Assembly (NCBI RefSeq): GCF_031769215.1
Contig: NW_026782268.1
Span: 2,108,001-2,168,601, forward strand
Direction of reading: 5' to 3'
Length of the DNA stretch: 60,601 nt
From: Ylistrum balloti
Lineage: Eukaryota
Shown piece after piece: positions 4,127-50,824 of this stretch; position 1 is the stretch's first letter; every line of letters begins with the position of its first letter. A program made the position numbers and the translations under genes. The notes below the pieces were generated by a model. That model had not been told where the DNA came from, ran no database searches, and saw only the letters and a program-made list of their open reading frames with translations.

Positions 4127-5542
4127 ATGGCAAGTATGGGCCGGTTTGTCATCTTGTGTTTTCTGATCGTTTCGTACGAGCACGTTGTTGCTCAGACATA
4201 TTCAGACATGGACAGACTTCATAAGAACTTGACCAGTAACTACAACAGGAATATACGGCCAACAGTGAATTTCTCAAGTCCAACGCATGTCGTAGTAGGA
4301 TTCCAATTGTTAAGTATAAAGGAATTTGTGGAAAAAGACAATAAGTTGTCTATCATGGGAATATTTATATTAGAGTGGAACGATTACAATATGGTGTGGG
4401 ATCCAGGACAATATGGAGGTATTTCAACTTTTCTGATCCCACAAAAAGACGTCTGGAAACCTGACTTGATCCTTGGCAATCCGTATAATAGTATCCAGTC
4501 CCTTGGTTTTGACGAAATGCATATCCGTGTAAGGTCCGACGGGACGATGTTTTGGATGCCCGGGGATATTTATGAATCCACTTGTGCTGCAGATATAACA
4601 AATTATCCGTTTGACGAGCATACCTGTTATCTGTTGTTTTATCCATGGATGTATCTTAACGACCAGGAAATGACATTACATAATTTGACAAGCAAACCGG
4701 AAACATCCCTGTATTTTCCAAGTGGACAATGGGAGCTGATTGATACGAGAATCGAGGCTGGAGCTTTAACGGTTACTCCAGAGTTCAAGTTAATGATCAG
4801 TTTTAGACGTCGTCCATTGTTTAGTTTAATCAATATCTTTGTACCCGCAAGTGTCATGGCGCTGCTTATTACCTTAGTGTTTCTCCTTCCGGCAGATTCA
4901 GGAGAACGAGTAGGATTTTCAATAACGGTCCTGCTTGCTTTGACCGTATTTCTCACAATAGTGTCCGATAGCTTACCTAACACCAGTGAACCTAGTATTC
5001 CACGTATGTCATATATCTTAATTGCGGATTTAGTAATAAGTACACTGGCAACGATATGTACTATCCTCGGGTTACGTTTGCACCACAAACCGGAAGAGAG
5101 CAAGATCCCAAAGTGGCTACAGTATTTCATCTGTGCGACGCAGAAAAACAATAGATATTCTGAAAAGGATCTTTCAGATTCGGATTACTCTCAGATACGT
5201 TCCCGAGAAGTTAGCGGTGTAAACTATACTCACCCAATGACAAGTTTACCTTCGGTATACTGCAGTCAAAACTACATGGTTCACGGGAGAAATGATCAAG
5301 GACATCATCGTTTATACCAACCAACGAGAAATAAAAAATTCACAACCGGAGACAACTCTGAGATGCAACACTCAGATCGCAGCAGATATCAGAGGAAAGA
5401 CTCATCTCATGATGACAGCAGTGAAGCTAACGTCGTCACATGGAAGCAGGTCGCGTCGTTTTGTGATGTGTTCTGCTTTGTGTTTTTTCTGATATTAGTT
5501 GTCGTTAAAAACATTATAGCATTTATAACATTCATGACGTAA
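4127..5542 (+). CDS. Gene A: intronless Cys-loop ligand-gated ion channel subunit, nAChR-like non-alpha (471 aa from ATG 4127)
   Basis: Signal-peptide-like N-terminus (MASMGRFVILCFLIVSYEHVVAQ), WKPD, Cys-loop CAADITNYPFDEHTC (C-x13-C), loop B YPWMY, M1-M3, M2 DSGERVGFSITVLLALTVF, C-terminal M4. No vicinal CC in loop C. The track start at 4049 is a TTG. Confidence 0.93.
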   Translation: MASMGRFVILCFLIVSYEHVVAQTYSDMDRLHKNLTSNYNRNIRPTVNFSSPTHVVVGFQLLSIKEFVEKDNKLSIMGIFILEWNDYNMVWDPGQYGGISTFLIPQKDVWKPDLILGNPYNSIQSLGFDEMHIRVRSDGTMFWMPGDIYESTCAADITNYPFDEHTCYLLFYPWMYLNDQEMTLHNLTSKPETSLYFPSGQWELIDTRIEAGALTVTPEFKLMISFRRRPLFSLINIFVPASVMALLITLVFLLPADSGERVGFSITVLLALTVFLTIVSDSLPNTSEPSIPRMSYILIADLVISTLATICTILGLRLHHKPEESKIPKWLQYFICATQKNNRYSEKDLSDSDYSQIRSREVSGVNYTHPMTSLPSVYCSQNYMVHGRNDQGHHRLYQPTRNKKFTTGDNSEMQHSDRSRYQRKDSSHDDSSEANVVTWKQVASFCDVFCFVFFLILVVVKNIIAFITFMT

Positions 5543-7012
5543 TGAACACCTTATCAAGACCCTACTGGACTTGCTTCTTAGCTATTGTTTTATTGTATGC
5601 TTGTAGTTTGACAAGGTTGAGTAGACACGATAACCTATAAGAAGTATATCCTCAAACGTACGAGATTGCTAAAGTATAAATTAGACACTGCTAGTGGAAA
5701 ATATTTCGACTTATCCGAATTTCGACTATAACGAAGTGTATAAATAAGGTTAACGATATCAGTTTCCTGACGTTGATTGATTGTATATGCAAAAGATTTA
5801 TTATCAACACAAAAATTTATACAATATAGTGTTCATACTACTTTCTTTAGAATGAGTCGACAGTGACCAATATGTTAATATCAATGTTTTGACTGATATT
5901 TCTAAGGGTCACGCACCTTGTTCCCTACATAACATGTAATTCGGAGTATTACTTTTAACCTTAGTAAAATTTTGCAAGAATGGCCACTCTCAGTCATTTT
6001 ATGGTTTGTAAGACCCCATATTTCACAACCATACATCAAAATGTTATTCACAATTTTAACAGATAAATCATATACACAAAAAAATACAGATTATATTGTC
6101 AACATTTCTTCATAATATGCATTCATATTGTTGTGTTTTTTAAACAGTATTTTTGAAACTGACCAAAGCGACAAAATATTATACTCAAGTAGGTAAAACT
6201 GCCCGCTATATCTAGCTCTTCATCATTACAAAAAAACGTGTATATTTGTTGGGTTTTTTTTCGTTATTCAATACCATACATTTAATTTTACTTACATCAA
6301 CCTTTACTTTCCACTCTGTATAGTATTCACTGAATACGTTTAGCTGTGGCTGTAAATCAGTTGGGCAGTTGGAGTAGAGTACTATTATCATAATAATATT
6401 ACGATAAACAAAGTGATAAAAACATGAAAATCATTTTCTAATTTATTACTAAGATGCGTCAACTGCGGAATATTATTTTGAACCATATACTGAAAGGCAA
6501 ACATATTTGTAATTAACTGAAAAAATCAAGTATTCGTTTTCTAGTTCTTAATATGGATCACCTATATATTAATTAGAATTATTAAGTGGTATATATACTG
6601 TTTCAAACAACAAAACTTCATCACATCTACATACATGTCAATTAATCTTAAACCAATTTACATACTTATCACCACAATCTACAGTCTTTATACAGTTTAC
6701 TCCACCACACTTAAATTTGTTTTGCTATTGCACCAGCTTTTATTTTTCATTTTAGCCACAAATCCAGGTTGGGTTTACCCAACGACACGTTCCTATTGTA
6801 CAGAGGAGTGATTTCGCCGACGCTTCCACGGGGGTGTCTGGGGTCGAAGGAGTACAACACACCCGTCTATTAAAAGTTTGTTCTTACACAGCACAATTTT
6901 CTTATTCTTTACTTGTGTCGATATATAAAATACATTGTGATATACAATAGCGTAAATATATGAATTTATAGTAGGACTGTCCCTACATAAAAAAAAATAC
7001 ACCAAGGTTTTT

Positions 7013-7464
7013 TGTGGGGTTCAGGTTGGTAACAGCCAATAAATAACAGAGATTATACGTTTCAGTATGATTTTATTACATACAGAAGGAAAACCAAGGA
7101 CGAAACAGAACAAAGCCCCAGTCAACACACAGGAGGCTACCGTCGGGACTAGCTAGGACATACACACAGACCTTACATACATTTCCGGTCAGCCTTCCTG
7201 GCTTTATCGGCATACACAAGACATAGACGAGACACCCACCTTACAACAGACCTGTCAAAGAGAGAAAAAAAATGAATTGAACTGCTCACGAAACTTTTTC
7301 AGACTGACGAAATGCAGGTACACAACGTGTTAGCCAATAAGAGACAGGAAGAGAAGAGCCAATCAGAAGAGAGTTCAGAGAGGTAGAGATGAAAGTGAAA
7401 GTAGAAACGTTAGTATTACAGTTAGGCATGTCCTGCCTGGTAGCCAAAGACAAAGAATGCTACA
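7013..7464 (-). mobile_element. Possible solo LTR (~450 bp)
   Basis: TGT...ACA termini, AATAAA on the minus strand about 60 nt from the end, several CCAAT motifs, composition unlike the flanks. No clean TSD. Confidence 0.3.
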
Positions 7465-7752
7465 AGGTATATATATGAACTATCATGAACAACTCCCTAT
7501 CAAGCTACATGCACCAGTACTCACACAACACCACGACCGGGCTACATTCATAATATACAACTTTCACAAATATAACCAATACCATAACGTATCACAGGAT
7601 GACAAGGTCCTCGTAGTTATGTGGAGCTTAAATTGTCTAGTGTTTGGCATCTTCATAAACATATATATACTACGAGGAAAAAGAATCACAACTTCAACAT
7701 CAGCGAACTGGTGACGTGGCCGTTTCGGCTGCCGCTTATCTCGCCATGGCAA

Positions 7753-7880
7753 CGCCTTTCACCTAGCCGTCCGGGGTTCGATTCCCGGTATGGACGTGAA
7801 AAGGTATGGGGTCACCTGCCTAACCACGTGAGCATTCCCATGATACTCCGATTTCCTCTCACAGTAACACCCTTCACGCG
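7753..7880 (+). mobile_element. 5'-truncated tRNA-derived SINE
   Basis: B-box GGGGTTCGATTCCCGG, followed by ggtcacctgcctaaccacgtg and a degenerate copy (gatactccgatttcctctcac) of the ggtactccggtttcctcccac core common in invertebrate SINEs. No A-box and no cloverleaf. Confidence 0.6.
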
Positions 7881-10800
7881 TTTTCTATTCTACCAATCAC
7901 TCTCAGAATGAATGTTGAAACAGCAACAATAGTGAGACTTTTGTTGGGTATATATAAGTATCCATATGCATGTTGCACTCGTCTTTTTACTCCTTGTAGG
8001 ATAGATAAAAATATTTAAATGAAACCCCTTTGTTAAAAGATCAGACTCTGGAAATAGAGACATTTAGTATTGTGATGTCTCAGAGATTTGATTTCATTGA
8101 GGGCATTCTGACACAAAAGAAACATAACAATACAGTCAAAATTGTATAGGTGACTATCACTGGTGGATCATGTAGCTCTTTGTTACTAATCTTAGCATCT
8201 TTACAGATTTTTATCATACTGCTGGTAAACACAAAAACAACTACAATAAGATTTTTGAGCGATCTTTCAAAACTGGTAGCTTCTCAGGCAGGATTTATGG
8301 TGAATAGCTCATATGAAAGATGTCCATTAAAATTTATATATAATCTAAAGATTTTTGAATTTTTGAGAACACGTTTATTTCTACCATACACTAAAACTCT
8401 ACAAAATAAAACATTCATATACATATATTAAGGATTAATACTACTTTTTACCACGACAAGGAATAAGATTACGTCTGTAGCACTATATTTTAAGTATTTA
8501 GATCTACTTTGTTTTGCGTTCACTTTCAACAACCTAAGATGGTGACCAGTTGAGCATCCAGTTTCTTAAGTGACACTTTCTAGAGTAAATATGCACTTGA
8601 TCCAATTTGTTATGGAGCCAAAATATAGAACTTAACCAGATGGTGCATATCTTAACTGTGGAAAAGATCCTTTTTGTTCACTTATTGAAATGTGTTGTTA
8701 TGGTATATCAAAACTATGGTACTCTTTTGCTTTTGTTTTGACGTCAAAATTTCCATACCGGTTAACATAGCTAGCTTCTCCATATGAATCATGATAAATA
8801 CCTGTCCATTTTCAAGGTCATCGGTAACGAAAGATTTTATCTATTTCTTGACGTAAATATCATGTTGGTACCTTTAATAGATTTTCATCTCTCGATATGG
8901 TTGTCGCTGAGTGCATTCGGCTACAAATGAGTTTGTTTAACTGTCCGCACTTCGGCTTTTCCCGGTAGCTTTCGGGAATCTTCGGCACCTATTATCTTTG
9001 ACGTCAATTCCGCCAGATGGTTAGTGATTGTTGTAAACACAGAGGAAGTCTCATCACGGACTTGACATTTTAAGTCAATAGTCTCCTATAAAATGGCGAT
9101 TTTTAAACGGTCTTATTTCAGCAGTGATGGTACACTGTGTTATGTCGGGGTATTGCAACCCTAATAAAAATCAAAGTTGTTTATGTCTATGTTAACTTCT
9201 TAAATACAACGGGATATGGAAAAATTACGAAACACAGCTGAGACGAACAACAAGTAACGAATCTAGCAGATGAACTCTTAAATATCTGTCCAACATGTTA
9301 ATTGGCTCCGATCAATTTCGGCAGCTGTTAACAACCCTTACCTGTCATACATACAGCTAGGTAAACACCTTAAGATACCTGTGTGAGCCCAGGTGTGCGT
9401 CCAAGGTCACACCTGTGTTCAGGGTCATTACCAGTATTAATCACCCTATTGTTAACTGGCAGGTATATCAGAATGCAATGAGATAGTATTTGTTATTTCA
9501 TCTTAAAATTCTGAGAGAATAGTTAAATGATAGTTTATATATTTTAATATTTCAATAATAAAATTTAATGATAATTTATATTTTTTTCCAAATAAATATT
9601 TTATTATCTTAGTGCTTTTGTTGACCCCTGTTCAGTGTGAGTTTTTATCAAAGTATCCCGAGTTATTTTTGGCTGTATATATATGTGTGTGTGTTATCTA
9701 ATATATCTATATATATATGTGTAAAACAAACACAATGTTTTTGTCTCTAATACTAGACTATTTAGCTATTGTTTTCTGTGTCCTCGTTCTATGATTCATA
9801 CATTGAGCATTACAATCATGTTTACGAAGAGATTGCTTTACGTCTAGAACATTATAGGATACTTACATAGTTTTGCACGTTTATTGTCCTACATGTGGAA
9901 GGTGATGGTGTTGTACAGTATGTGTACATGTGTTCCGGTATATTTGTGTACTTCCCCAGAAGATGATGTCCTGCTCTATGGGGTTTTCTTTGTTTTTCGA
10001 AGGTGAATTTCATTCTGCATGTATGGAACAGTAGTAGACACGAGAAGTGCAAGGGATAAAATTTATTTTCTCGACAATTGTATATATACAGATGAAAACA
10101 TTAGCTCTGCTGAATTAATTTACGAACAAACGTATATAACAATTTATTAACAAAGCATATACGACATATCCAAGCATGGTAAAATTACACACATGTTAAC
10201 AAAGCAAAACAGTTATAAACAATGTATTTGCTGACAAAATATTGATGGGACGCAGTAATAAAATTACACAAAATATAAAACGATAGAATAGCGTTGTTTG
10301 ATTTTTGGTGACAAATTAGTCATTTAAATATATATTAGCAAAATGTGAGCCGAGAGTTCATTCCTTTATAAATCAGATAAAACTGGACGTCTTGCTGCTT
10401 ATTAAGGTAAATTCACAGTCCACTTAACTAGTAGGTGTCCTGTCACAACCATTAATCCCCTCCAATCGGTAAGGTCCCGGTGTGTACTTAGGTAGCCCAG
10501 GGCATGTGGAACTTAACAGCGATTAATAATGTAATGAATATTGCATTTAACAAACACTTTACGATTAGAATAAAATTATTTCGATTATTAAAACAAAATC
10601 TGAAAAAAGTGGAAAGACGGCTCCCATCACTGAAATGAACAGCAGATGAAAATCGCAAAATTGACAATATTATAAAGAATGACTTTGTCTGCAGCTACAT
10701 AAAAGTTGTCACTTATATGTAAATATAGATGTGCAGTAAACAAATAGTTTAATAAAAAAAAAACACTACCTCTTAGTCATTTTATGGTTGTTGTACATGT

Positions 10801-11471
10801 TTATGAAATCAAATATAGCCGATTTAATGTACAGAATCTACTAAAACACTACTAATAAACAAATAAACATGTGTCTAGTGGAAGATTGACGTCCTTGAGA
10901 GTCATTGGTTTTCATAAAAGAAATAACTCTAGATATTTAAACTTCCTCGTGTTTTCACAAGTAGAAATTGTACTAGCTGTCCATCCCCTAATTCCTTTCT
11001 TAAGACGTCATCTAATGATTTTTCACGAAAATTAAATCTTTATTCCAATTGCCGATGACCTTTAACTTCAAAATATTCTCTTGTCACATGATTGCCTTCT
11101 AATTTAGAGAATATGGCTATGTTTACGCATTATATATTATGTATTACAGTATGATATCACCTATGATATCATCAGGTTAAAATAATGTAATGACGTCATT
11201 ATCATAGATTTCATTGTGAGATAACTATGTGGACACCATTATCCAATTTCTGAAATACTTACCTGCATAAAACGATCATTTACTGAAAGTTATCTCAAAT
11301 ATATGTGATTTCCGTAACTCGTCACATTTTTTAAAAATTTTTTGTTTTTTGTTTTAACGAGTCATTAAAAATTCTAAGACTCGTTACTGTAAATGCCTTT
11401 TTTTATAACTTACGGAAACATTAAGCGCCATGCAAAATATAGATGGATTCTAGAAGTTTGTTTGTTTTCCT

Positions 11472-12902
11472 TTAAGCACTATCCTTAAAAAGTAAAAATG
11501 ATGCTATTATTTTTGCAATGATAATCAAAAGGAACACAATAAACAAGAAAACATCGCAAAAGTCTGCAATGTCTTTCCATTTAACGATAGGCTGATCTTC
11601 TGCTGAAGAGGTCGCAACTTCCTGTTTGTTATTGCCCTCCTCCTGGGGATATTGCCTACTGCTATTAGGATGTGGAGTTATTCCTTCTCGCTTGTATTGG
11701 TTTCCTCTTATCTCATTGTAAGTGCCTGATCTACTTTGAAACTGTCCAAACTGATTGAACTTCCAATGATATATCTTTCTGTTCTCTGTAATCGACGACA
11801 CATTTGTTGATCTGGAATTGAATTCATTTGTATATGGATTAGATAACGTGTCTGATGCATCAAATGTAGATTTTTTCTCTTTTATACGTTTGGAGCAACA
11901 TCTCTTACACGAGAGACATCGGAGCCATCGTGGGACAGTTTCGTCCTCGCCTTTATGATGTAAACGTAATACCAGAATTGTACATATAGTTATCATTGTT
12001 CCTATTACCAGATCTGCAAGCAAGAGATAGGACATCCTTGGTATGCTTGGCTGACTGGTGCTGGGTAAGCTATCAGCGATGATAGTTAAAAACACAGACA
12101 TTGCTAGTAATACTGTTATAGAAAATCCAACACGTTCACCTGAATCTGCGGGAAGCAGAAACACCAGCACATTTAAAATCCCCAGAACAGTTATCGGCAC
12201 CAAGATATTAACTACATGAAAAATCGGACGGCGTTGAAACTCCAACCCAAGTAAAAACAATTGGGAACCTGGTATTTCACCAACTCTAACGTAAGTGTCT
12301 CTGAGTTCCCATACACCACTGGGAGTAAATTGTGCCAGGTCCATTTCCCTATGCACGACCTGAATGAGCATTTCGTCCATCGAATGCATCCAAGGTGTGA
12401 AGATGAATTCGCATCGATGAATATCGAAAGGATAATAAGTGACGTCAGCAGAACATGTGGTCTGGTACACATCTCCGGGCATCCAAAGCATCGTTCCATC
12501 AAACATCACGCGGACATTAAGCCTTTCAAATCCCAATGGTTCGATTTTCTCGTATGGCTGGGCATTAACTACTTCAGGTATCCATACCTGATTTTGTGGT
12601 ATTAATAATGAATATATACCTGCATGTACATGTGGATCCCATGCCATTCTCTTGTCTTTCCATGTGAATGTGAAAATGCCAACTATCTCGAGTTTCCCTT
12701 CTTTCTCTTCAAACTCCTTAATAGATAAAAGTATAAAAGAAGAATCGACTATTGTCGGTTGTTGGACATTTTCAATAGGTCGAATGTTTCTGTTGTAATT
12801 TGTTGTTAAGTTATTGTAAAGTCTGCTATAATCATCACTATCTTGTCCTAGTGTGATTCCGTATAATGTCGACAACAACACGAAGGATATCTTAAAATCC
12901 AT
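11472..12902 (-). CDS. Gene B: intronless nAChR-like non-alpha Cys-loop subunit (476 aa from ATG 12902)
   Basis: Signal peptide MDFKISFVLLSTLYGITLG, WIPE, Cys-loop CSADVTYYPFDIHRC, loop B TPWMH, M2 DSGERVGFSITVLLAMSVF, M4. No loop C CC. The track start at 12923 is a GTG. Confidence 0.93.
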   Translation of the reverse strand: MDFKISFVLLSTLYGITLGQDSDDYSRLYNNLTTNYNRNIRPIENVQQPTIVDSSFILLSIKEFEEKEGKLEIVGIFTFTWKDKRMAWDPHVHAGIYSLLIPQNQVWIPEVVNAQPYEKIEPLGFERLNVRVMFDGTMLWMPGDVYQTTCSADVTYYPFDIHRCEFIFTPWMHSMDEMLIQVVHREMDLAQFTPSGVWELRDTYVRVGEIPGSQLFLLGLEFQRRPIFHVVNILVPITVLGILNVLVFLLPADSGERVGFSITVLLAMSVFLTIIADSLPSTSQPSIPRMSYLLLADLVIGTMITICTILVLRLHHKGEDETVPRWLRCLSCKRCCSKRIKEKKSTFDASDTLSNPYTNEFNSRSTNVSSITENRKIYHWKFNQFGQFQSRSGTYNEIRGNQYKREGITPHPNSSRQYPQEEGNNKQEVATSSAEDQPIVKWKDIADFCDVFLFIVFLLIIIAKIIASFLLFKDSA

Positions 12903-13789
12903 CTTACCTGCAGGAAATCCCACATGAATATACTGTAGGTTTAAATCGTCGTCGCATATTTAGTACTGGGACAAAGTAATAGCACGTGACATAGATTGAT
13001 ACCATAACTGTGTCAGCCAAACTTACAATGAACTATAGTCCTACCATTGTATTTGAATGGTGAAGCTTTGTATTATGATATGGGGTATTTCTCAGTCCAT
13101 TGTCAATAAAGGCTCGACAAGCTCTGTTTCTATCTTGTGTGAATATGTCATGAAAGTTACTCTCCTACTTTTAAAGATCGTTGTTTGCAATTATCGTTAC
13201 CTAGCAAAGTTTTATCAATGGAATGAATACACTACTTAAGTTATGCAAGAGTGACTTCCGTTCAACTATTGACGACACTATAAATATCACTTTAGCCTTC
13301 TTCAAAATATTTAAAAGACCTTTAGTGACCAAACTATTATCGTCATATACTGTTTATGTTAACCTTAATTTCGTCTTCAAACAATAATTGTAAACAGTTT
13401 ATTTAATGTTATTTGAAATACCTTACCGTAAGTGTATCATGAAAGCAGGACTCTCCTTAACTAAGCTTGTTGATGAATCATGATAATATACCATGGCTAT
13501 TAACGGAATGATAACTCAAAAGTGGACTGTCAAGTATTTTAAAGACGTTAACAACACCTAAACATAAAAAGAAATATCTGTCAAATTTGTGTTCAGATTC
13601 CAATATTGTGTTGTATAGAGCATTCCTCCAAGTAAAGCTATGGATTTATTTTCCAATGTGTGACAGGTGACCGATGACCTCGTACGGCTCTAGTTTATTT
13701 CTCAATGCAGTAGTTTTAGTTATGAAATTGAGATTGATTTAAATATGGAGAAAGGTAGGTCAATGCCACAATGACAATTATATTCATGG

Positions 13790-14610
13790 TCTTATGGAAA
13801 CTACGTCCCTCTGTTGGCTGACTTGTTTTTGTTTTCATACGAGGCTGAATTAATTGAAGAGCTTATCAAAACAGGTCATACTTTCACTTTCACTTTCCGA
13901 TATATTGATTACGTCTTATTTTTGAATAACCAAAAAGGATTAAACGTAAGTATAAGCATACCAGAATTGGAAATCAAATACACGACAAACTCTTCTACAT
14001 CAGCTGCTTATCTCGATCTTTTCCTACAACAAAACCAACATGGCCAGTTTTCCACCAAGCTATATGAGAAACATGATGATGATTTCAAGTTCTCTATCGT
14101 GAATTTTCTATTTCTAGATAGCAATACCCCTGCATCACCAACCTATGGTATTTATATGTAATAGTTGATTCGATTTTCAAGGGCCTGTTCCCTTTATCAC
14201 GGTCATCATGCAAGACGTCGTCAACGTCCGGACAAACTCGTAACCCAGGGTTGTACATACAGATTGACGAAATTTATGGGGAAAATTTATGGTCGCAAAG
14301 GTGATCTCATTCTGTTTCTTGATATGAAGCTGAACGTGTTTGATACTAGTTGGTTTGTCTATTGGTTCCGTTGTTGTATACCACGTTCTCATTTGAGAAT
14401 GCGTTATTACTTACTTGAATTGACCAATGATTGCATGGCATTTGCCGTCGAAGAAGCAAAAGACGCTTACTCTTCTGGAACACCCGATCTTATCCTCTAT
14501 GTATTTTTCAGGTGCGTGTAAATCTTTCTTTTGATCATATTTTGCCTTAGTTTTATGGAATTTGAGTTTTGCTTATGATTATGTTGACATAGCATTTTGC
14601 TTGGTGGTTT
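13790..14610 (+). mobile_element. Penelope-like retroelement fragment (C-terminal RT/thumb plus 3' tail), degenerate
   Basis: Translates as PLLADLFLFSYE..FRYIDYV..ELEIKYTT..SAAYLDL..TKLYEKHDD.FKFSIVNF..SNTP..YGIY..LIRFSRACS, recognised from memory as the invertebrate PLE RT C-terminus (Naiad-like clade uncertain). Contains stops and frameshifts. Confidence 0.7.
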
Positions 14611-14764
14611 TTAGTAAGGAAAAAGCCTCTTTTTATCTCAGTAAAGAAAAAAAGTGTCGTGCAGAAAACATAATATTCTCTTAAAGTTAAAGTTAAAATA
14701 CATATGACTGGGATATTTCATTGCCCACACGCAATTGTCGTTACTTCTACATGGCAATGTACAT

Positions 14765-15010
14765 TAATATGTAGCTAGGACGGCTGTGGCGGTTGTCATC
14801 TCTACAAGTCGCACTGATGAGAGGTTTCGATGTACATTGAAAATAGCTAGGCTGGTTACGGATGTAGCTATCTCTAGAGGCCACTATGATGAGATAAGGC
14901 CAATGTTTATATTGCCAGTGGCTAGGGTGACTGTGGCCATCTTCAGAGGCCACACTGATAAGATAGTGTCAATGTTTATTAACAAGTAGCTAGAGTGATT
15001 GTGAATATGG
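14765..15010. repeat. Degenerate ~70-bp tandem repeat at the end of duplication unit 1
   Basis: Motif ctctagaggccacactgatgaga...tagctagggtgactgtggc recurs at 14800, 14872 and 14941. Confidence 0.6.
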
Positions 15011-16675
15011 CCCATTGTTTTCTAAGAACACTGAACATTATAATCATGTTTACGAAGAGATTCCTTTACGTCTAGAACATTATAGGATACTTACATAGTT
15101 TTGCACGTTTATTGTCCTACATGTGGAAGGTGATGGTGTTGTACAGTATGTGTACATGTGTTCCGGTATATTTGTGTACTTCCCCAGAAGATGATGTCCT
15201 GCTCTGTGGGGTTTTCTTTGTTTTTCGAAGGTGAATTTCATTCTGCCTGTATGGAACAGTAGTAGACACGAGAAGTGCAAGGAATAAGATTTATTTTCTC
15301 GACAATTGTATATATACAGATAAAAACATTAGCTGTGCTGAGTTAATTTACGAACAAACGTATATAACAATTTATTAACAAAGCATATACGACATATCCA
15401 AGCATGGTAAAATTACACACATGTTAACAAAGCAAAACAGTTATAAACAATGTATTTGCTGACAAAATATTGATGGGACGCAGTAATAAAATTACACAAA
15501 ATATAAAACGATAGAATAGCGTTGTTTGATTTTTGGTGACAAATTAGTCATTTAAATATATCTTAGCAAAATGTGAGCCGAGAGTTCATTCCTTTATAAA
15601 TCAGATAAAACTGGACGTCTTGCTGCTTATTAAGGTAAATTCACAGTCCACTTAACTAGTAGGTGTCCTGTCACGACCATTGATCCCCTCCAATCGGTAG
15701 GGTCCCGGTGTGTACTTGGGTAGCCCAGGGCATGTGGGACTTAACAGCGATTAATAATGTAATGAATATTGCATTTAACAAACGCTTTACGATTAGAATA
15801 AAATTATTTTGATTATTAAAACAAAATCTGAAAAAAGTGGAAAGACGGCTCCCATCACTGAAATGAACAGCAGATGAAAATCGCAAAATTGACAAAATTA
15901 TAAAGAATGACTTTGTCTGCAGCTACATAAAAGTTGTCACTTATATGTAAATATAGATGTGCAGTAAACAAATAGTTTAATAACAAACACTATATCTTAG
16001 TCATTTTATGGTTGTTGTACATGTTTATGAAATCAAATATAGCCGATTTAATGTACAGAATGTACTAAAAACTACTAATAAACATGTGTCTAGTGGAAGA
16101 TTGACGTCCTTGAGAGTCCTTGGTTTTCATAAAAGAAATAACTCTAGATATTTAAACTTCCTCGTGTTTTCACAAGTAGAAATTGTACTAGCTGTCCATC
16201 CCCTAATTCCTTTCTTAAGACGTCATCTAATGATTTTTCACGAAAATTAAGTCTTTATTCCCATTGTCGATGACCTTTAACTTCAAAATATTCTCTTGTC
16301 ACATGATTGCCTTGTAATTTAGAGAATATGGCTATGTTTACGCATTATGTATTACAGTATAATATCACCTATGATATCATCAGGTTAAAATAATTAACTG
16401 ACGTCACAATCATAGATTACATTATGTCGTAACAATGGACACCCTTATCCAATTTCTGCAATATTTACCTGCATAAAACGATCATTTACTGAAAGTTATC
16501 TCAAATATATGTGATTTCCGTAACTCGTCACATTTTTTAAAATTTTTTTGTTTTTGTTTTAACGAGTCTTTAAACATTCTTAGACTCGTTACTGTAAATG
16601 TTTTTTTTATAACTTACGGAAACATTAAGCGCCATGCAAAATATAGATGGATTCTAGAAGTTTGTTTGTTTTCCT

Positions 16676-18106
16676 TTAAGCACTATCCTTAAAAAGTAAA
16701 AATGATAATATTATTTTGGCAATGATAATCAAAAGGAACACAATGAACAAGAAAATATCGCAAAAGTCCGCTATGTCTTTCCATCTAACGATAGGCTGAT
16801 CTTCTGCTGAAGAGGTCGCAACTTCCTGTTTGTTATTGCCCTCCTCCTGGGGATATTGCCTACTGCTATTAGGATGTGGAGTTATTCCTTCTCGCTTGTA
16901 TTGGTTTCCTCTTATCTCATTGTAAGGGCCTGATCTACTTTGAAACTGTCCAAACTGATTGAACTTCCAATGATATATCTTTCTGTTCTCTGTAATCGAC
17001 GACACATTTGTTGATCTGGAATTGAATTCATTTGTATATGGATTAGATAACGTGTCTGATGCATCAAATGTAGATTTTTTCTCTTTTATACGTTTGGAGC
17101 AACATCTCTTACACGAGAGACATTGGAGCCATCGTGGGACAGTTTCGTCCTCGCCTTTATGATGTAAACGTAATACCAGAATTGTACATATAGTTATCAT
17201 TGTTCCTATTGCCAGATCTGCAAGCAAGAGATAGGACATCCTTGGTATGCTTGGCTGACTGGTACTGGGTAAGCTATCAGCGATGATAGTTAAAAACACA
17301 GACATTGCTAGTAATACTGTTATAGAAAATCCAACACGTTCACCTGAATCTGCGGGAAGCAGAAAAACTAGCACATTTAAAATCCCCAGAATAGTTATCG
17401 GCACCAACATATTAACTACATGAAAAATAGGACGGCGTTGAAACTCCAATCCAAGTAAAAACAATTGGGAACCTGGTATTTCACCAACTCTAACGTAAGT
17501 GCCTCTGAGTTCCCATACACCACTGGGAGTAAATGGTGTCAGGTCCATTTCCCCACGCACGACCTGAATGAGCATTTCGTCCATCGAATACATCCAAGGT
17601 GTAAAGATGAATTCGCATCGATGAATATCGAAAGGATAATAAGTGACGTCGGCAGAACATGTGGTCTGGTACACATCTCCGGGCATCCAAAACATTGTTC
17701 CATCAAACATCACGCGGGCATTAAGCCTTTCAAATCCCAATGGTTCGATTTTCTCGTATGGCTGGGCATTAACTACTTCAGGTATCCATACCTGATTTTG
17801 TGGTATTAATAATGAATATATACCTGCATGTACATGCGGATCCCATGCCATTCTCTTGTCTTTCCATGTGAATGTGAAAATCCCAACTATCTCGAGTTTC
17901 CCTTCTTTCTCTTCAAACTCCTTAATAGATAAAAGTATAAAAGAAGAATCGACTATTGTCGGTTGTTGGACATTTTCAATAGGTCGAATGTTTCTGTTAT
18001 AATTTGTTGTTAAGTTATTGTAAAGTCTGCTATAATCATCACTATCTTGTCCTAGTGTGATTCCGTATAATGTCGACAACAACACGAAGGATATCTTAAA
18101 ATCCAT
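16676..18106 (-). CDS. Gene C: intronless nAChR-like non-alpha subunit, recent paralogue of B (476 aa)
   Basis: Same motifs as B. Differs from B at 16 residues by manual comparison. ORF is intact. Confidence 0.92.
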   Translation of the reverse strand: MDFKISFVLLSTLYGITLGQDSDDYSRLYNNLTTNYNRNIRPIENVQQPTIVDSSFILLSIKEFEEKEGKLEIVGIFTFTWKDKRMAWDPHVHAGIYSLLIPQNQVWIPEVVNAQPYEKIEPLGFERLNARVMFDGTMFWMPGDVYQTTCSADVTYYPFDIHRCEFIFTPWMYSMDEMLIQVVRGEMDLTPFTPSGVWELRGTYVRVGEIPGSQLFLLGLEFQRRPIFHVVNMLVPITILGILNVLVFLLPADSGERVGFSITVLLAMSVFLTIIADSLPSTSQPSIPRMSYLLLADLAIGTMITICTILVLRLHHKGEDETVPRWLQCLSCKRCCSKRIKEKKSTFDASDTLSNPYTNEFNSRSTNVSSITENRKIYHWKFNQFGQFQSRSGPYNEIRGNQYKREGITPHPNSSRQYPQEEGNNKQEVATSSAEDQPIVRWKDIADFCDIFLFIVFLLIIIAKIILSFLLFKDSA

Positions 18107-18984
18107 CTTACCTGCAGGAAATCCCACATGAATATACTGTAGGTTTAAATCGTCGTCGCATATTTAGTACTGGGACAAAGTAATAGCACGTGACATAGAT
18201 TGATACCATAACCGTGTCAGCCAAACTTACGATGAACTATAATCCTACCATTTTATTTGAATAGTGGAGCTTTGTATTGTGATATGGGGTATTTCTCAGT
18301 TCATTGTCAATAAAGGCTCGACAAGCTCTGTTTCTATCTTCTGTGAAAATGTCATGAAATTCACTCTCCTACTTTAAGAGATCGCTGTTTGCAATTATCA
18401 TTACCTAGCAGAGTTTATCAATGAAATGAATACACTACTTAGGTTATGAAAGAGTGACTTCCGTTCAACTATTGACGACACTACAAATATCACTTTAGTC
18501 TTCTTCAAAATATTTGAAAGACCTTTAGTGACCAAACTATTATCGTCATGTACTGTTTATGTTTACCTTAATTTCGTCTTCAAACAATAATTGTAAACAG
18601 TTTATTTAATGTTATTTGAAATACCTTACCGTAAGTGTATCATGAAATCAGGACTCTCCTTAACGAAGCTTGTTGATGAATCATGACAATATACCATGGC
18701 TATTAACGGAATGATAACTCAAAGGTGGACTGTCGAGTATTTTAAAGACGTTAACAACACCTAAAACATAAAAATAAATATCTGTCAAAGTTGTGTTCAG
18801 ATTCTAATATTGTGTTGTATAGGGCATTCCTCCAAGTAAAGCTATGGATTTATTTTCCAATGTGTAACAGGTTACCGATGACCTCGTTTATTTCTCAATC
18901 AAGTAGTTTTAGTTATGAAATTGAGATTGATTTAAATATGGAGAAAAGTAGGTCAATGCCACAATGACAATTAGATTCATAGTC

Positions 18985-19790
18985 TTATGGAAACTACGTC
19001 CCTCTGTTGGCTGACTTGTTTTTGTTTTCATGCGAGGCTAAATTAATTGAAGAGCTTATCAAAACAGGTCACACTTTCACTTTCCGATATACTGATGACG
19101 TCTTATTTTTAAATAACCAAAAAGGATTAAACGTAAGTATAAGCCTACCAGAATTGGAAATCAAATACACGACAAACTCTTCAACATCAGCTGCTTATCT
19201 CGATCTTTTCCTACAACAAAACCAACATGGCCAGCTTTCCACCAAGCTATATGAGAAACATGATGATTTCAAGTTCTCTATCGTGAATTTTCTATTTCTG
19301 GATAGCAATACCCCAGCATCACCAACCTATGGTATTTATATGTAATAGTTGATTCGATTTTCAAGGGCCTGTTCCCAATATCACAGTCTTTATGCAAGAC
19401 GTCGTCAACGTCCGGACAAACTCGTAACCCAAGGCTGCAAAAGATGCAGGTTAATGAAAATTATGGGGAAAATGTATGGTCGCAAAAGTGATCTCATACT
19501 GTTTCTTGATATGAAGCTGAACGTGGTTAATACTCGTTAGTTTGTGTATTGGTTCTGTTGTTGTATACCGCGTTCTCATTTGAGAATGCGTTATTACTTA
19601 CTTGAATTGACCAATGGTTGCATGGCATTTGCCGTCGAAGAAGCAGAAGACACTTCCTCTTCTGGAACACCTGCTCCTATCCTCCATGTATTTTTCAGGT
19701 GTCTGCGTGTAAATCTTTCTTTTGATCATATTTTGCCTTAGTTTTATGGAATTTGAGTTTTGCTTATGACTATGTTGACATAGCATTTTG
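18985..19790 (+). mobile_element. Penelope-like retroelement fragment (duplicate of 13790-14610)
   Basis: Same RT C-terminal motifs (FRYTDDV, YLDL, KLYEKHDDFKFSIVNF) and the same tail. Confidence 0.7.
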
Positions 19791-19954
19791 CTTGGTGTTT
19801 TTTAGTAAGGAAAAAGCCTCTTTTTATCTCAGTAAAGAAAAAAAAGTGTCGTGCAGAAAACATAATATTCTCTTAAAGTTAAAGTTAAAATACATATGAC
19901 TGGGATATTTCATTGCCCACACGCAATTGTCGTTACTTCTACATGGCAATTACA

Positions 19955-20295
19955 TTAATATGTAGCTAGGACGTCTGTGGCGGTTGTCATCTCTACAAGT
20001 CGCACTGATGAGATATGTTTCGATGTACATTGAAAATAGCTATCTCTAGAGGCCACACTGATGATATAAAGTCAATGTTCATATTACCAGTGGCTAGGGT
20101 GACTGTGGCCATCTTCAGAGGCCACACTGATAAGATAGTGTCAATCTTTATTAACAAGTAGATAGGGTGACTGTGAATGTAGCCATCTCTAGAGGGCTCA
20201 TTGTAATCTGACAAATATCTAAGGTGTCTAAGGCCGCAGTAATGAGACGAGGTCAGCGTACATCAACAAATAGCTAGAGTAGCTGTTAGAGCCGC
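19955..20295. repeat. Degenerate ~70-bp tandem repeat, longer version
   Basis: Motif recurs at 19991, 20044, 20113 and 20187, with a decayed unit near 20270. Confidence 0.6.
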
Positions 20296-35931: not shown

Positions 35932-36132
35932 ATCAGTACGCCTCCAGGATTCCAGTAAATATCTCCGTTGTAGAGCACATAGACGTTGGATTCATCTGAT
36001 CCGATGTGCTGCATACCGTCAGCGGCATTGATTAGGACAATGCTTGGAAGCCACAACTGAGAAGCCGGCAGCACCATCCCTTCCACACCACCAAAATCAT
36101 CTGGGTCCCATTGAAGCCGGTAGTCGTGCCAT
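35932..36132 (-). CDS. Gene E exon 2 (201 nt)
   Basis: Acceptor ttctattggcaag, donor AT|gtaagg. Encodes WHDYRLQWDPDDFGG..WLPSIVLIN..YWNPGGVL. Phase 2/2 keeps the frame with exons 1 and 3. Confidence 0.9.
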
Positions 36133-37931: not shown

Positions 37932-38173
37932 AGGATAACAAACACCCCTGACAAGGAGACGATTTCGGTGACGACATTGAAGTCGATGACGGAGAAGAGG
38001 TTGTAGGTTACGTTCACTTGTAGCGTGTCATCAATGTAAAACACAGGTCGGAACTCTGGTCTGTAGTCTTCGAATAAGGTATCATTTAATTTCTCCAGGT
38101 CCTTCATCGTTCTCCTAGCCATGACAGTGGCCCCTACAGACAGGATCAGGAGCAGAAATGAAACGGAAGACAT
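37932..38173 (-). CDS. Gene E coding exon 1 (242 nt)
   Basis: ATG 38173, signal peptide MSSVSFLLLILSVGATVMA, helix and RP motif (EDYRPEFRP), donor CT|gtaggt. An acceptor (ttgacag) lies 31 nt upstream of the ATG. Confidence 0.88.
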
Positions 38174-47455: not shown

Positions 47456-47916
47456 TTTAATAATATATTTTGTTTACCATAACCATCAAATGTCTAATGT
47501 GGCTAAATATTGTATACAAGAATTCAACATTATATAAAGACAGTTACCATAACGCATTAAAAATATTTCATTTCAATATAAATAGCACATCAAAATCATC
47601 CAATGACGGCATTTCTCATTAATCTGTTTCATGTATAATACGACATAAATCTATTAAAAGGTAGGATATTACATTATTTATTTCAAACGAAAGATATCTT
47701 GTTATTATATTTTTACTACTCTATCACAAAACATTGTTCACATTTTGCTATTATGCGATAAATCTGATGTTTGTAAGGATATTATATTTTCTCTCTGTTC
47801 TATTTTCAGCTTTTCATTTTCTTTAAAGTGTCCTGTCTACCATAACAGCGCGTGAAAACGTTTCAACGTGTACAACCCTTAAACTACATATAACTAACAT
47901 TCGTCCTGTTCTTGGA

Positions 47917-48183: not shown

Positions 48184-48410
48184 NNNNNNNNNNNNNNNNN
48201 NNNNNNNNNNNNNNNNNNNNNNNNNNNNNNNNNNNNNNNNNNNNNNNNNNNNNNNNNNNNNNNNNNNNNNNNNNNNNNNNNNNNNNNNNNNNNNNNNNNN
48301 NNNNNNNNNNNNNNNNNNNNNNNNNNNNNNNNNNNNNNNNNNNNNNNNNNNNNNNNNNNNNNNNNNNNNNNNNNNNNNNNNNNNNNNNNNNNNNNNNNNN
48401 NNNNNNNNNN
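48184..48410. other. Assembly gap (227 N)
   Basis: Run of N. Confidence 1.
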
Positions 48411-48707: not shown

Positions 48708-49515
48708 TTATTCCTGATCATGTTCGTGTTGAAGGTAAACCATTGAAAATACAATGCACATCAGTATCATTGTAGACAAGGATATAAAAAACAGAAATTT
48801 GTCAAAAGCACTTAACACAGACATTTTAGTCAATATATCGGAGTCGTTCCCATCAGTAGAATCAGGAACAACCCTGTCCAACGGCATATTTTCATAGTCT
48901 TTGTCAGCAGATTTTTGTGAGGACCTACTTTTCTGTCTGTTTTTCCTATTTACTAGTCGACACAGCCGAATCAACCAAGTTGGCAGTTGCTCATATTCGT
49001 TTAAACGAATGGTTGCTATAGTCATCAAAATTACCATAGTACTGTGTAGTTCCGATGCCAACAAGAAATATGTCATTCCTGCCAATGGTTCCGATGTCGT
49101 TGGTAAATATGACCCCATCACGGACATATATACTGTCAGCGACAAAAAAAGGGTCAAGGAAAACGAAACTCTATCACTAGCCCCAATGGGGATCAAAAAT
49201 ACAAAGGCATCTAATATGCAGAGAACCGCGACCGGAACAAGCATGTTGATGATGAAATAATCCGACTTCCGGATCATGCCAATTGTTATAGAGAGAAACG
49301 AAATCGACGTCAAGTCCTTGTATTTGTCAACCTTGTCCGAAACGTTAGTCCAGATTACGTCCCATTCGCCATTCTTTGTGTAGAAATCCATATTTACAGA
49401 TAATTGGTGAGGGATGAGTCTCATCTCCTCTTTAGTGTATATCATGTTATTTAAGATTAGCATACAAGTTTGATAGTCCCTGGGAAAGTCACGCATGTTT
49501 GTTTTGCACGACGAC
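48708..49515 (-). CDS. Gene F exon 3 of 3; join complement(50583..50824,49983..50183,48708..49515), 416 aa nAChR-like non-alpha subunit, paralogue of E
   Basis: Acceptor atttaattccag at 49516. Splicing gives GGVLVSSCKTNMRDFPRDYQTC. M2 is ASDRVSFSLTLFLSLTVYM. Confidence 0.9.
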
Positions 49516-49982
49516 CTGGAATTAAATGCGACAATGCTACATTATGCCATCTATGTAAAGATAAATCATATGACAAGTACATACATTGACTTTTTTTCAA
49601 ATTTCATTTTCAAAATAATAACTACTATTTGAATATGGAAATGACATTCACTGTTTGAAGAAAGTATTCAAATATTATAGTTATGCGTGAAATCCTCTAA
49701 CAAACATAAACGATCAATAATCAAGGGTAAGTTGTCATTGTTTATATTATCAACTGCATAGTATATAATCATCTCAAAGTTATGCATTATTTAGGATAAG
49801 GATATATGGATTTAGATTACTAGTAATGGTTAGGCTCTTTAGTTAGAAGTTAACAATCTGAAATAAATTGTTAATATCAGAATGATCATAATAAAAACAA
49901 TTTTTTTATTAGACAAATGGGAGTTGAGTTGAGTTACTAATAAGCATTGAATTTTTAATACATAATAGAAAATCAGTATTAC

Positions 49983-50183
49983 ACGAGAACGCCTCCCGGA
50001 ACCCACAACACTCTGCCGCTGTGATCTACGTAGACGTCGAAGTCTTCAGATCCCACCTGCTGTATATTGTCCATACCCGTCAGAAGTACGATCTTGGGGT
50101 ACCATACCTGGGAAGCCGGTAACACAATACCATCCACGCCCCCAAAATCTTCCGGATCCCACGCAAGTCGGTAGTCTGTCCAA
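49983..50183 (-). CDS. Gene F exon 2 (201 nt)
   Basis: Acceptor ttcattgaccag, donor GT|gtaata. Encodes WTDYRLAWDPEDFGG..WYPKIVLL..LWVPGGVL. Same length and phase as gene E exon 2. Confidence 0.9.
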
Positions 50184-50582
50184 CTGGTCAATGAATTACA
50201 AAATGTGCATTTAGCTCAATCATTAATCCACTGGTTAAAGTGTATGAAATAAAATATCAGAAAGTATTTCCTACCCTACTTTATAAAAAGTTGCTACACT
50301 AAATGTTTATATCATACCAACAACAAAAATGTTTTCCAAAACATGACAACAGTAATATTATCCATAGAATATTCTTAAAAAATATAGATTTTACGTGATA
50401 ACATTTAACCAGTTAACTGTCTCTTGCATTCACATGCTCAGCGGCATTTGTTAAGTTTCTTCTACACTTGGTTCTTGTCTGTTTGAAGCCGCCTCAGAAT
50501 TTTGTCTGAAACATTTGTCAACCCCATCCTTACAACGACTTATAAGCATGTAGTAAGTTATTAGAAGCAAAGCCAAACAAAC

Positions 50583-50824
50583 CTCATCTGCAAAGCTCCA
50601 GACAATGAGATTGTCTCAGTAATCACGCTGAAGCTAATGAAAGAAAACAGGTTATACAGAATGTGGACGTCTACTGTGTGGTTTAGGTAAAACGCTGGTC
50701 GGAACTCGGGTGTGTAATCTCGGAACAAAGTGTCATTCAGTCTTTGCATGTCCGCCATTGTTCCCATGGAGGACCCATAAACGACCTCTAGCGACAGGAA
50801 TATGATCAGCGTCTTCAGAGACAT
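50583..50824 (-). CDS. Gene F coding exon 1 (242 nt from ATG 50824; alternative in-frame ATG at 50854)
   Basis: Signal peptide MSLKTLIIFLSLEVVYG, RDYTPEFRP, donor AG|gtttgt. Splicing gives GALQMSWTD. Confidence 0.87.

What the first reader, a model, noticed from the sequence alone, without database searches (positions are those of the whole stretch)
4127..50824. Array of six orphan Cys-loop receptor subunits, none able to form a classical acetylcholine site: candidate ionotropic chemosensory system
Seen: six intact subunits in about 47 kb, falling into three divergent sequence types (A/B/C, D, E/F). All keep the Cys-loop and a cation-type M2 (acidic -1', Leu 9', Val 13'). None has the loop C vicinal Cys-Cys (A RIEAGALTVTPEF; B/C YVRVGEIPGSQLF; D ENARYSKYATVISH; E SDKVDDYDQMESSSSSY; F SDKVDKYKDLTSISF). 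The loop A Tyr position is G, A, A, I, I, L and the loop D Trp55 position is I, I, I, G, V, A. Established: these aromatics and the CC define ACh binding in nAChR alpha subunits; nAChR-like genes are greatly expanded in bivalves, many intronless; cephalopod chemotactile receptors are clustered, intronless nAChR derivatives that lost this cage and sense poorly soluble compounds. Inference: this cluster may encode channels gated by non-ACh ligands (environmental chemicals, settlement cues, microbes or pH), possibly co-assembling combinatorially.
Basis: partly seen in the sequence, partly recalled or inferred. Interest (0 to 1): 0.85.

Follow-up and report, generated by a model that had tools for sequence, protein, structure and literature searches.

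The report
Scallop orphan nicotinic-type channel gene array
Six intact, evolutionarily conserved scallop genes for nicotinic-receptor-like ion channel subunits that have lost the normal acetylcholine pocket are really there, but they belong to a bivalve-wide gene expansion already described, and a chemosensory role is still untested.

Summary
The window is the last 60.6 kb of a Ylistrum balloti scaffold. It holds exactly six intact Cys-loop channel genes: A-D are intronless, and E and F have three exons each. There is no loop-C Cys-Cys. The loop A Tyr position reads G/A/A/I/I/L and the loop D Trp position reads I/I/I/G/V/A. The Cys-loop and a cation-type M2 are kept.

The N gap lies 297 nt past F's stop codon, outside every coding sequence.

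All six genes are under purifying selection (dN/dS about 0.1-0.3). Gene order F-E-D is conserved in Mizuhopecten, and F-E in Pecten.

The array is not special. All six sit in a mollusc-only, CC-less clade (167 of the 223 sequences retrieved). The scan has flagged at least seven more such arrays in this genome. Jiao et al. 2019 described this intron-poor, tandemly arrayed expansion. They, and a 2026 preprint, already proposed non-ACh ligands or ionotropic chemosensation.

Nothing here ties the genes to cephalopod chemotactile receptors. Pocket positions evolve fast even between orthologs, which fits either diversifying or relaxed selection.

Verdict: a new member of a known kind. Function remains orphan.

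The parts
4127..5542 (+). Gene A: intronless Cys-loop subunit, 471 aa (the public model starts at 4136)
   Evidence: Single ORF. Pfam LBD 4e-40 and TM 7e-26. Identical to own-genome protein P0001. AF2 pLDDT 82.5 with a nAChR fold. Orthologues in Pecten and Mizuhopecten are 57% identical, dN/dS about 0.17.
11472..12902 (-). Gene B: intronless subunit, 476 aa from the ATG at 12902
   Evidence: ORF and Pfam. The exact protein is in the public collection. 97.8% nt identity to C, dN/dS 0.30.
16676..18106 (-). Gene C: intronless subunit, a young duplicate of B
   Evidence: equals P0005.
9973..20178 (.). Tandem duplication that made B and C: two units of about 5 kb (9973-15006 and 15201-20178), 95% identical overall
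   Evidence: blastn of the two halves. The duplicated stretch may extend further, because the search intervals were cut at 15200.
24969..26219 (-). Gene D: intronless subunit, 416 aa, short cytoplasmic loop
   Evidence: ORF and Pfam. The Mizuhopecten orthologue is an uninterrupted ORF, 63% identical, dN/dS 0.16. The exact product is not in the public protein collection.
37932..38173 (-). Gene E, exon 1 (signal peptide to beta2)
   Evidence: Splice model. The full model equals annotated protein P0229.
35932..36132 (-). Gene E, exon 2 (loops A and E)
   Evidence: The same exon boundaries are seen in the Mizuhopecten and Pecten orthologues.
34295..35105 (-). Gene E, exon 3 (Cys-loop to M4 and stop)
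   Evidence: dN/dS 0.15-0.17 against orthologues. AF2 pLDDT 89.3.
50583..50824 (-). Gene F, exon 1
   Evidence: The model equals P0224 minus 10 N-terminal residues.
49983..50183 (-). Gene F, exon 2
48708..49515 (-). Gene F, exon 3 (Cys-loop to M4 and stop)
   Evidence: dN/dS 0.10-0.15 against orthologues.
48184..48410 (.). Assembly gap, 297 nt downstream of F's stop codon. It lies outside all coding sequence and possibly inside F's 3' UTR.

Best explanation
The six genes are working members of the bivalve-wide expansion of nicotinic-receptor-like (cationic Cys-loop) channel subunits. That expansion is intron-poor, tandemly arrayed and lacks the loop-C Cys-Cys.

Origin. The array joins two old blocks. 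A, B and C belong to one CC-less subfamily. D, E and F belong to another. Each block is conserved across scallops. B and C arose by a recent 5-kb tandem duplication.

Shown here. Each protein has a signal peptide, a beta-sandwich ligand-binding domain with the Cys-loop, a pre-M1 Arg, four membrane helices and a cation-type pore (acidic -1' ring, Leu 9' gate). So they should assemble into pentameric cation channels. The inter-subunit pocket has been rebuilt:
- There is no Cys-Cys lid, and loop C is reduced to a tight hairpin in A-C.
- Loop A Tyr and loop D Trp are replaced by small or aliphatic residues.
- A-D have Arg at the alpha7 L109 position; E/F have Tyr there.
- Loop B Trp is replaced by Met in E/F.

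Inferred. They cannot bind acetylcholine in the classical way on either face (about 0.8-0.85). Most likely they form channels gated or modulated by something other than acetylcholine, with the ligand unknown (about 0.5). An external chemosensory role is one possibility within that (about 0.2).
For: Family and fold: Pfam, PDB sequence search, AF2 models with Foldseek top hits to muscle and alpha7 nAChR.

Pocket and pore residues.

Functional constraint:
- B vs C: dN/dS 0.30, with fewer nonsynonymous changes than neutral expectation, p = 0.001.
- A orthologues: 0.17-0.22. D: 0.16. E and F exon 3: 0.10-0.17. M1-M3 is lowest at 0.07-0.10.

Conserved order and strand: F-E-D in Mizuhopecten, F-E in Pecten. 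The E/F intron positions are conserved, including in an unrelated Logan contig.

Phylogeny: all six fall in a mollusc-only CC-less clade. It holds 167 of 223 rows with FastTree support 97, and 61 of 71 rows with IQ-TREE PMSF support 99. It is separate from CC-bearing sequences, whose pocket columns are invariant.

Literature: bivalves carry 99-217 nAChR genes, many intronless and in tandem arrays, mostly expressed in gill. Only 13 of 33 oyster alpha subunits keep the full site.
Against: - No expression, ligand or assembly data exist for these genes.
- dS between species is saturated (1.3-1.9 or undefined), so the dN/dS values are rough.
- Pocket columns Q57, Q117 and L119 are among the least conserved ligand-binding-domain positions even between orthologues (7th-9th percentile). 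A disused site would look the same.
- D's exact product is missing from public protein sets.
- AF2 models are monomers, so the interface pocket was not modelled.
- The related annelid orphan Alpo4 has resisted all attempts at activation, so 'ligand-gated' cannot be assumed.
Confidence: 0.55

Rival explanations
1. Accessory or structural subunits. They co-assemble with CC-bearing alpha subunits encoded elsewhere and form ordinary ACh-gated channels. They tune conductance, trafficking or desensitisation without contributing a binding face, as vertebrate beta1, beta3 and alpha5 do.
For: - Lack of Cys-Cys is normal for non-alpha subunits.
- Public annotation names them beta-, delta- or acr-3-like.
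- Pocket positions are weakly constrained even between orthologues, as expected if the pocket is unused.
- Pore and gating elements are the best conserved parts.
Against: - The complementary-face Trp (W55) is also gone in all six.
- CC-less genes vastly outnumber alpha subunits in bivalves: 33 alpha of 132 in oyster, and all 119 named mollusc relatives retrieved here (117 bivalve, 3 gastropod) lack CC.
- Loop B Trp and the 151 position stay conserved, and a pocket Arg is kept in 103 of 167 clade members. This suggests the interface is not simply abandoned.
Confidence: 0.25
2. One reading: an ionotropic chemosensory repertoire for external cues (settlement cues, microbial or poorly soluble compounds, pH). 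It would be functionally convergent with cephalopod chemotactile receptors and possibly combinatorial.
For: - The genomic style matches CRs: intronless or intron-poor, clustered, classical site lost.
- D-F are CRT1-sized with a short cytoplasmic loop (416-417 vs 410 aa).
- Pocket columns are the most variable ligand-binding-domain columns, at the 66th-99th percentile, while the pore is conserved.
- B/C amino-acid differences fall in loops E, B and F, including the Q117 and Y151 positions.
- Bivalve nAChR-like genes are mainly expressed in gill, where choline acetyltransferase is not.
Against: - There is no expression or ligand evidence.
- No sequence or fold affinity to CRT1.
- The CR clade is reported as predominantly cephalopod.
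- A-D carry a charged Arg in the pocket rather than the hydrophobic aromatic pocket of CRT1.
- The B/C clustering is post hoc and not distinguishable from the spread of synonymous changes (Fisher p = 0.14).
- Fast pocket evolution also fits relaxation.
Confidence: 0.2
3. Decaying retrocopies or pseudogenes with no function.
For: Jiao et al. report that more intron-poor than intron-rich nAChR genes have low or no expression. D is absent from public protein sets.
Against: - All six reading frames are intact.
- dN/dS is 0.1-0.3 in every comparison.
- Orthologues and gene order are retained across three scallop genera.
Confidence: 0.03

Closest known systems
Expanded intron-poor, tandemly arrayed nAChR-like genes of bivalves (Jiao et al. 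2019, BMC Genomics, PMC6896357)
   Same: Intronless or 1-2 introns. Tandem arrays of 2-12 genes. Lineage-specific duplication. Degenerate ACh-binding residues. LBD plus NTM architecture. A scallop (Mizuhopecten, 138 genes) is among the species surveyed.
   Different: Nothing essential. This is the Ylistrum balloti instance. Added here: residue-level pocket description, orthology and synteny across three scallops, selection estimates, and the composite origin of the array.
Cephalopod chemotactile receptors (CRT1, CRB1)
   Same: nAChR-derived. Intronless and clustered. Classical ACh site lost. Cation-permeable pentamers. Similar short length for D-F.
   Different: - No phylogenetic or score affinity (CRT1 111 bits vs 140 for alpha3).
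- The CRT1 pocket is hydrophobic and aromatic (Y58, W122, F124, F192), whereas A-D carry Arg at the L109 position and A-C have a truncated loop C.
- E/F have introns.
- Sensory expression and ligands are shown for CRs and unknown here.
Alpo4, an orphan nAChR-like receptor of the annelid Alvinella pompejana (eLife 2023, PMC10338036)
   Same: A lophotrochozoan expansion member without the loop-C Cys-Cys. Not activated by ACh or serotonin. Ligand unknown. Similar score to E (115 bits).
   Different: Alpo4 keeps the full aromatic cage (F103, W159, Y199, Y205, W65). The scallop genes have lost most of it.
Vertebrate non-binding nAChR subunits (beta1, beta3, alpha5) and nematode non-alpha subunits
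   Same: They lack a functional principal face, and public annotation names the scallop genes after them.
   Different: By my own recollection, not tested here, those subunits keep the loop D Trp and a full-length loop C, and each genome has only a handful. Here the Trp is lost, loop C is cut by 7 residues in A-C, and the clade has dozens of members per genome.

Membership tests
[quoted passage not shown] | Neur_chan_LBD plus Neur_chan_memb domains and a four-helix transmembrane domain | tested here: met
   Pfam for all six. AF2 models of A and E show the beta-sandwich plus M1-M4. Foldseek top hits are nAChR chains, prob 1.00.
[quoted passage not shown] | Cys-loop C-x13-C with an FP.D-type motif | tested here: met
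   C-x13-C is present in all six. The motif is YPFD in A-C, FPSD in D, FPKD in E and FPRD in F.
[quoted passage not shown] | Cation-type M2: acidic -1', no Pro-Ala-Arg, Leu 9' | tested here: met
   SGER in A-D and ASDR in E/F, with L9' and V13'.
nAChR alpha subunit (principal ACh-binding face) | Vicinal Cys-Cys at the tip of loop C | tested here: not met
   Absent in all six. Loop C is 7 residues shorter in A-C.
nAChR alpha subunit (principal ACh-binding face) | Aromatic box Y93, W149, Y188, Y195 | tested here: not met
   Y93 reads G/A/A/I/I/L. W149 is kept only in A-D. A Tyr at the Y188 position is aligned only in E/F; it is deleted in A-C and falls in an alignment gap in D. Y195 is not conserved.
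nAChR non-alpha subunit contributing the complementary ACh-binding face | Loop D Trp (W55/W57) | tested here: not met
   Reads I/I/I/G/V/A.
Bivalve expanded intron-poor nAChR-like family (Jiao et al. 2019) | No introns or 1-2 introns | tested here: met
   A-D are single ORFs. E and F have two introns each.
Bivalve expanded intron-poor nAChR-like family (Jiao et al. 2019) | Tandem arrays and lineage-specific duplication within a mollusc-specific clade | tested here: met
   Six genes lie in 47 kb, with at least one more just upstream. B/C is a species-level duplicate. The pectinid expansions have 28 and 55 rows.
Bivalve expanded intron-poor nAChR-like family (Jiao et al. 2019) | Organ- or stage-specific, stress-responsive expression (gill-biased) | not testable with these tools
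   No RNA-seq access. The two Logan contigs examined are genomic (the E/F-type one has an intron acceptor), not transcripts.
Cephalopod chemotactile receptors | Membership of the CR clade | tested here: inconclusive
   No CR sequence could be put into the tree. By score, CRT1 ranks 60th for E (111 bits vs 140) and is outside the Foldseek top 50. A preprint reports the CR clade as predominantly cephalopod, with a broader 'CR-like' clade that includes bivalves.
Cephalopod chemotactile receptors | Hydrophobic, aromatic orthosteric pocket that binds poorly soluble ligands | tested here: inconclusive
   By alignment only. A-D have Arg at the L109 position and mostly aliphatic residues elsewhere. 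E/F have Tyr at the 109 position, and E also at 117. No pentamer model or docking was possible.
Cephalopod chemotactile receptors | Expression in peripheral sensory epithelium and activation by environmental chemicals | not testable with these tools
   Needs in situ hybridisation, RNA-seq and electrophysiology.

The most novel reading that the evidence does not exclude
Scallops, and bivalves generally, use the CC-less nAChR-like expansion as an ionotropic chemoreceptor repertoire on gill, mantle tentacles or larval sensory organs. This would have arisen independently of cephalopod chemotactile receptors. The rebuilt pocket (conserved Arg at the alpha7 L109 position, truncated loop C in the A-C type, Trp-to-Met and gained Tyr in the E/F type) would define ligand classes different from both ACh and the hydrophobic CR ligands.
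Probability: 0.2. Interest if true: 0.75.

Novelty: new member of a known kind. Interest (0 to 1): 0.3.

Why it matters
Bivalves carry 100-200 of these genes and none has a known ligand. If even one subfamily proved to be an environmental or microbial-cue receptor, bivalves would gain a receptor class for settlement, feeding or toxin sensing. It would also be a second, independent conversion of a neurotransmitter receptor into a sensory receptor in molluscs.

This window adds useful particulars. It gives a short list of intact, selected genes with one-to-one orthologues in farmed scallops: OWF48380/81 and OWF44949-51 in Mizuhopecten, and XP_033752351/2 and XP_033752768 in Pecten. It also shows two contrasting pocket designs side by side, and a young duplicate pair (B/C) that differs mainly in the ligand-domain loops. 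These are convenient material for de-orphanisation. It does not change the state of knowledge by itself.

Tried and rejected
1. CR sequences for the tree. I tried to get cephalopod CR sequences. The protein searches returned bivalve, gastropod, vertebrate and unnamed environmental sequences only. PDB alignments are printed only for top hits, so only score ranks could be compared.

2. Foldseek against PDB does not discriminate among nAChR-like chains. All E-values are about 1e-29 to 1e-33, so it says nothing beyond the fold.

3. Specificity-site pattern. I tested whether pocket columns are conserved within orthologue groups but differ between paralogues. They are not. Q57, Q117 and L119 are also among the least conserved within orthologues, so this argument for a ligand site fails.

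4. Co-variation of Arg109 with Trp149, as a possible inter-subunit cation-pi pair. R+W is the commonest state (75 of 167), but Arg also occurs with Ser, Leu or Phe at 149. There is no clean coupling.

5. B/C nonsynonymous clustering in residues 137-209. It is nominally significant (p = 0.001) but chosen post hoc, and not different from the synonymous spread (p = 0.14).

6. Expression evidence from Logan contigs. The two contigs looked at come from one run. The E/F-type contig has an intron acceptor, and no poly(A) tail was evident in the printed ends of either contig.

7. The representative search with E found no close E/F-type relative beyond F (56%) and one Logan fragment (47%). The subfamily therefore looks scallop-restricted, but the library carries no names.

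8. The pseudogene reading was rejected on dN/dS and synteny.

9. An anion-channel reading was rejected: there is no PAR motif.

Full report
**What is there.** The window is AT-rich animal DNA. Protein searches identify it as the saucer scallop Ylistrum balloti, scaffold JAUZWB010000298.1. Gene A maps to 2,112,136-2,113,542 of a 2,168,601-bp record, so the window is the last 60.6 kb of that scaffold.

ORF listing and Pfam show six Cys-loop channel genes. A tblastn scan with the six proteins finds these six loci and nothing else. A, B, C and D are single ORFs. E and F each have three coding exons joined by GT-AG introns in phase 2. My E model is identical to the annotated Y. balloti protein P0229 (XP_060074460). 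My F model equals P0224 (XP_060074461) apart from a 10-residue upstream start.

**The assembly gap.** The only N run is 48184-48410. F is on the minus strand and its stop codon is at 48708-48710, so the gap begins 297 nt downstream of the coding sequence. No reading frame has to be carried across it, and I did not try to fill it. F's 3' UTR may run into the gap, because no AATAAA or ATTAAA lies between the stop and the gap.

F sits on one side of the gap and A-E on the other, so their linkage depends on the scaffold join. Independent support comes from two relatives:
- In Mizuhopecten yessoensis the orthologues of F, E and D lie in the same order and on the same strand of one scaffold, with spacings of about 13 and 10 kb.
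- In Pecten maximus the F and E orthologues are 5 kb apart on one chromosome.

Aligned to vertebrate alpha7, the results are:
- Loop D Trp55 reads I, I, I, G, V, A.
- Loop A Tyr93 reads G, A, A, I, I, L.
- No gene has the loop-C Cys-Cys.
- Loop C is seven residues shorter in A-C. The AF2 model of A shows a two-residue hairpin turn there.
- All six keep C-x13-C, the pre-M1 Arg, and an M2 with acidic -1' (Glu in A-D, Asp in E/F), Leu 9' and Val 13', without a Pro-Ala-Arg anion motif.

Pairwise identities confirm three types: A to B/C 45%, B to C 97%, D to all others 27-30%, E to F 56%.

Three refinements apply. Loop B Trp149 survives in A-D and is Met only in E/F. E/F keep a Tyr at the Y188 position. 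At the pocket position of alpha7 Leu109, A-D carry Arg and E/F carry Tyr.

**Are they functional genes?** Yes, by every test available.
- B and C are 97.8% identical in coding sequence and sit within a roughly 5-kb tandem duplication that is 95% identical overall. They differ by 17 nonsynonymous and 15 synonymous changes (dN/dS 0.30). That is significantly fewer replacements than neutral expectation (p = 0.001).
- A against its Pecten and Mizuhopecten orthologues gives dN/dS 0.17-0.22.
- D against Mizuhopecten gives 0.16.
- E and F exon 3 give 0.10-0.17.
- M1-M3 is always the most constrained part (0.07-0.10).

Synonymous divergence is saturated, so these are rough values, but they are far from 1. 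Intron positions of E/F are conserved in both other scallops and in an unrelated Logan genomic contig.

**Where they sit in the family.** I built trees from 223 retrieved relatives (FastTree) and from a 71-row subset (IQ-TREE with a site-heterogeneous model). Both put all six in a mollusc-only clade (support 97 and 99). In that clade no member has the Cys-Cys, and the W55 and Y93 columns are almost never aromatic. It is separate from CC-bearing sequences, which keep every pocket residue.

Within the clade:
- A groups with single Pecten and Mizuhopecten orthologues.
- B/C is a Ylistrum-specific pair, sister to a paralogue 520 kb away.
- D has a Mizuhopecten orthologue inside a 55-row pectinid expansion.
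- E and F each have Pecten and Mizuhopecten orthologues. Together they form a small, long-stemmed sister group of the D type, with Met at the Trp149 position in all six members.

A full-library HMMER search with E found nothing closer than F (56%) and one fragment (47%).

The array is therefore composite. The A-C block and the D-F block belong to two deeply diverged CC-less subfamilies. In Pecten their orthologues lie about 4 Mb apart on one chromosome, and in Mizuhopecten they are on different scaffolds. The array also continues upstream: another 448-aa subunit gene ends about 1 kb before the window.

**How unusual is this?** Not very. Jiao et al. (2019) reported 99-217 nAChR genes in five bivalves, with 138 in the scallop Mizuhopecten. 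Most are intronless or have 1-2 introns, and 55-65% lie in tandem arrays of up to 12 genes. Only 13 of 33 oyster alpha subunits have the full ACh site, and expression is predominantly in gill. They already suggested that the diverse ligand-binding domains may bind diverse ligands.

A 2026 preprint (MolluscaGenes) describes divergent mollusc clades with substituted ligand-binding residues. It explicitly raises an ionotropic chemosensory role. It places chemotactile receptors in a predominantly cephalopod clade, with a broader 'CR-like' clade that includes bivalves.

The scan's own notes list at least seven other arrays of the same kind in this genome, one of them directly upstream. I did not test those.

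**Evidence bearing on mechanism.** Three patterns stand out.
- Ligand-binding-domain columns are twice as variable as M1-M3 (entropy 1.6 vs 0.8).
- The canonical pocket columns are among the most variable, at the 66th-99th percentile in the A-type and D-type clades. They are invariant in the CC-bearing clade.
- Loop B Trp149 is the exception. It is conserved in 54 of 55 D-type sequences and is Trp or Tyr in the A type. Arg at the L109 position is found in 103 of 167 CC-less sequences.

This looks like a conserved pore and scaffold with a fast-evolving pocket, as in chemoreceptor families. However, when orthologue groups are compared, the complementary-face columns (Q57, Q117, L119) also change between orthologues (7th-9th percentile of within-orthologue conservation). 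That equally fits a site under relaxed constraint.

The B/C replacements fall largely in loops E, B and F, and include the Q117 and Y151 positions. The clustering is post hoc and not separable from the synonymous pattern.

There is no special similarity to octopus CRT1. It scores 111 bits against 140 bits for human alpha3 with E as query, and it is outside the Foldseek top 50 for both models. The CRT1 pocket is built of aromatic and hydrophobic residues, unlike the Arg-bearing pocket of A-D.

**Conclusion.** The six genes encode functional, cation-selective Cys-loop subunits of a known, bivalve-wide CC-less expansion. They cannot make a classical ACh site on either face.

My best reading, at about even odds, is that they form channels gated or modulated by something other than ACh. 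The main rival, at about one in four, is that they are silent partners of CC-bearing alpha subunits. An external chemosensory role is possible at about one in five, but nothing computed here supports it.

The finding is a sound description of a new instance of a known kind.

Noticed in passing
window 56158-60149 (+): Ty3/Gypsy-type LTR retrotransposon coding region at the scaffold end. A 941-aa gag-pol ORF carries a CCHC zinc knuckle, reverse transcriptase and RNase H. It is followed by an overlapping 397-aa integrase ORF in another frame. The region has a higher GC content (0.42-0.44) than its surroundings.
   Followed up: partly
window 40061-43364: A 3.3-kb satellite of a 27-bp unit (about 120 copies, also read as 54 and 81 bp). 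It has extreme strand asymmetry (GC skew -0.46 to -0.65) and lies between genes E and F. It produces spurious long ORFs on both strands.
   Followed up: partly
window 27435-29440 and 47120-47456: A 58-bp minisatellite (35 copies, 93% matches) lies between D and E. A 36-bp repeat (9 copies) lies just beyond the low-coordinate side of the gap.
   Followed up: no
window 9973-20178: The B/C duplication units are 95% identical overall, but the coding sequences are 97.8% identical. This fits purifying selection or gene conversion acting on the coding part.
   Followed up: partly
genes A-D, alpha7 L109-equivalent residue (loop E, beta5'): Arg occupies this pocket-facing position in A-D and in 103 of the 167 CC-less mollusc relatives. 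E/F-type genes have Tyr there together with Met at the loop B Trp position. This may be a hallmark of the clade's rebuilt pocket. Its meaning is unknown.
   Followed up: partly
window 24969-26219 (gene D): D is an intact ORF under purifying selection, but its exact product is not in the 15-billion-protein collection, unlike A, B, C, E and F. It may be unannotated or modelled differently in the public annotation. Its Mizuhopecten orthologue is annotated with a 10.6-kb multi-exon model, although an uninterrupted ORF exists there.
   Followed up: partly
about 1-2.4 kb before window position 1 (locus L001 3470-4816); window end = scaffold end: Another 448-aa nAChR-like gene lies just upstream on the + strand. 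The window also stops at the end of the scaffold. The true size of the array is therefore unknown on both sides.
   Followed up: partly
L004 (Pecten maximus LR736847.1, about 29.16 Mb): The Pecten orthologue of A does not translate colinearly from its annotated range. The open frame begins only at locus position 10177, so the N-terminal part may be interrupted or mis-modelled.
   Followed up: no
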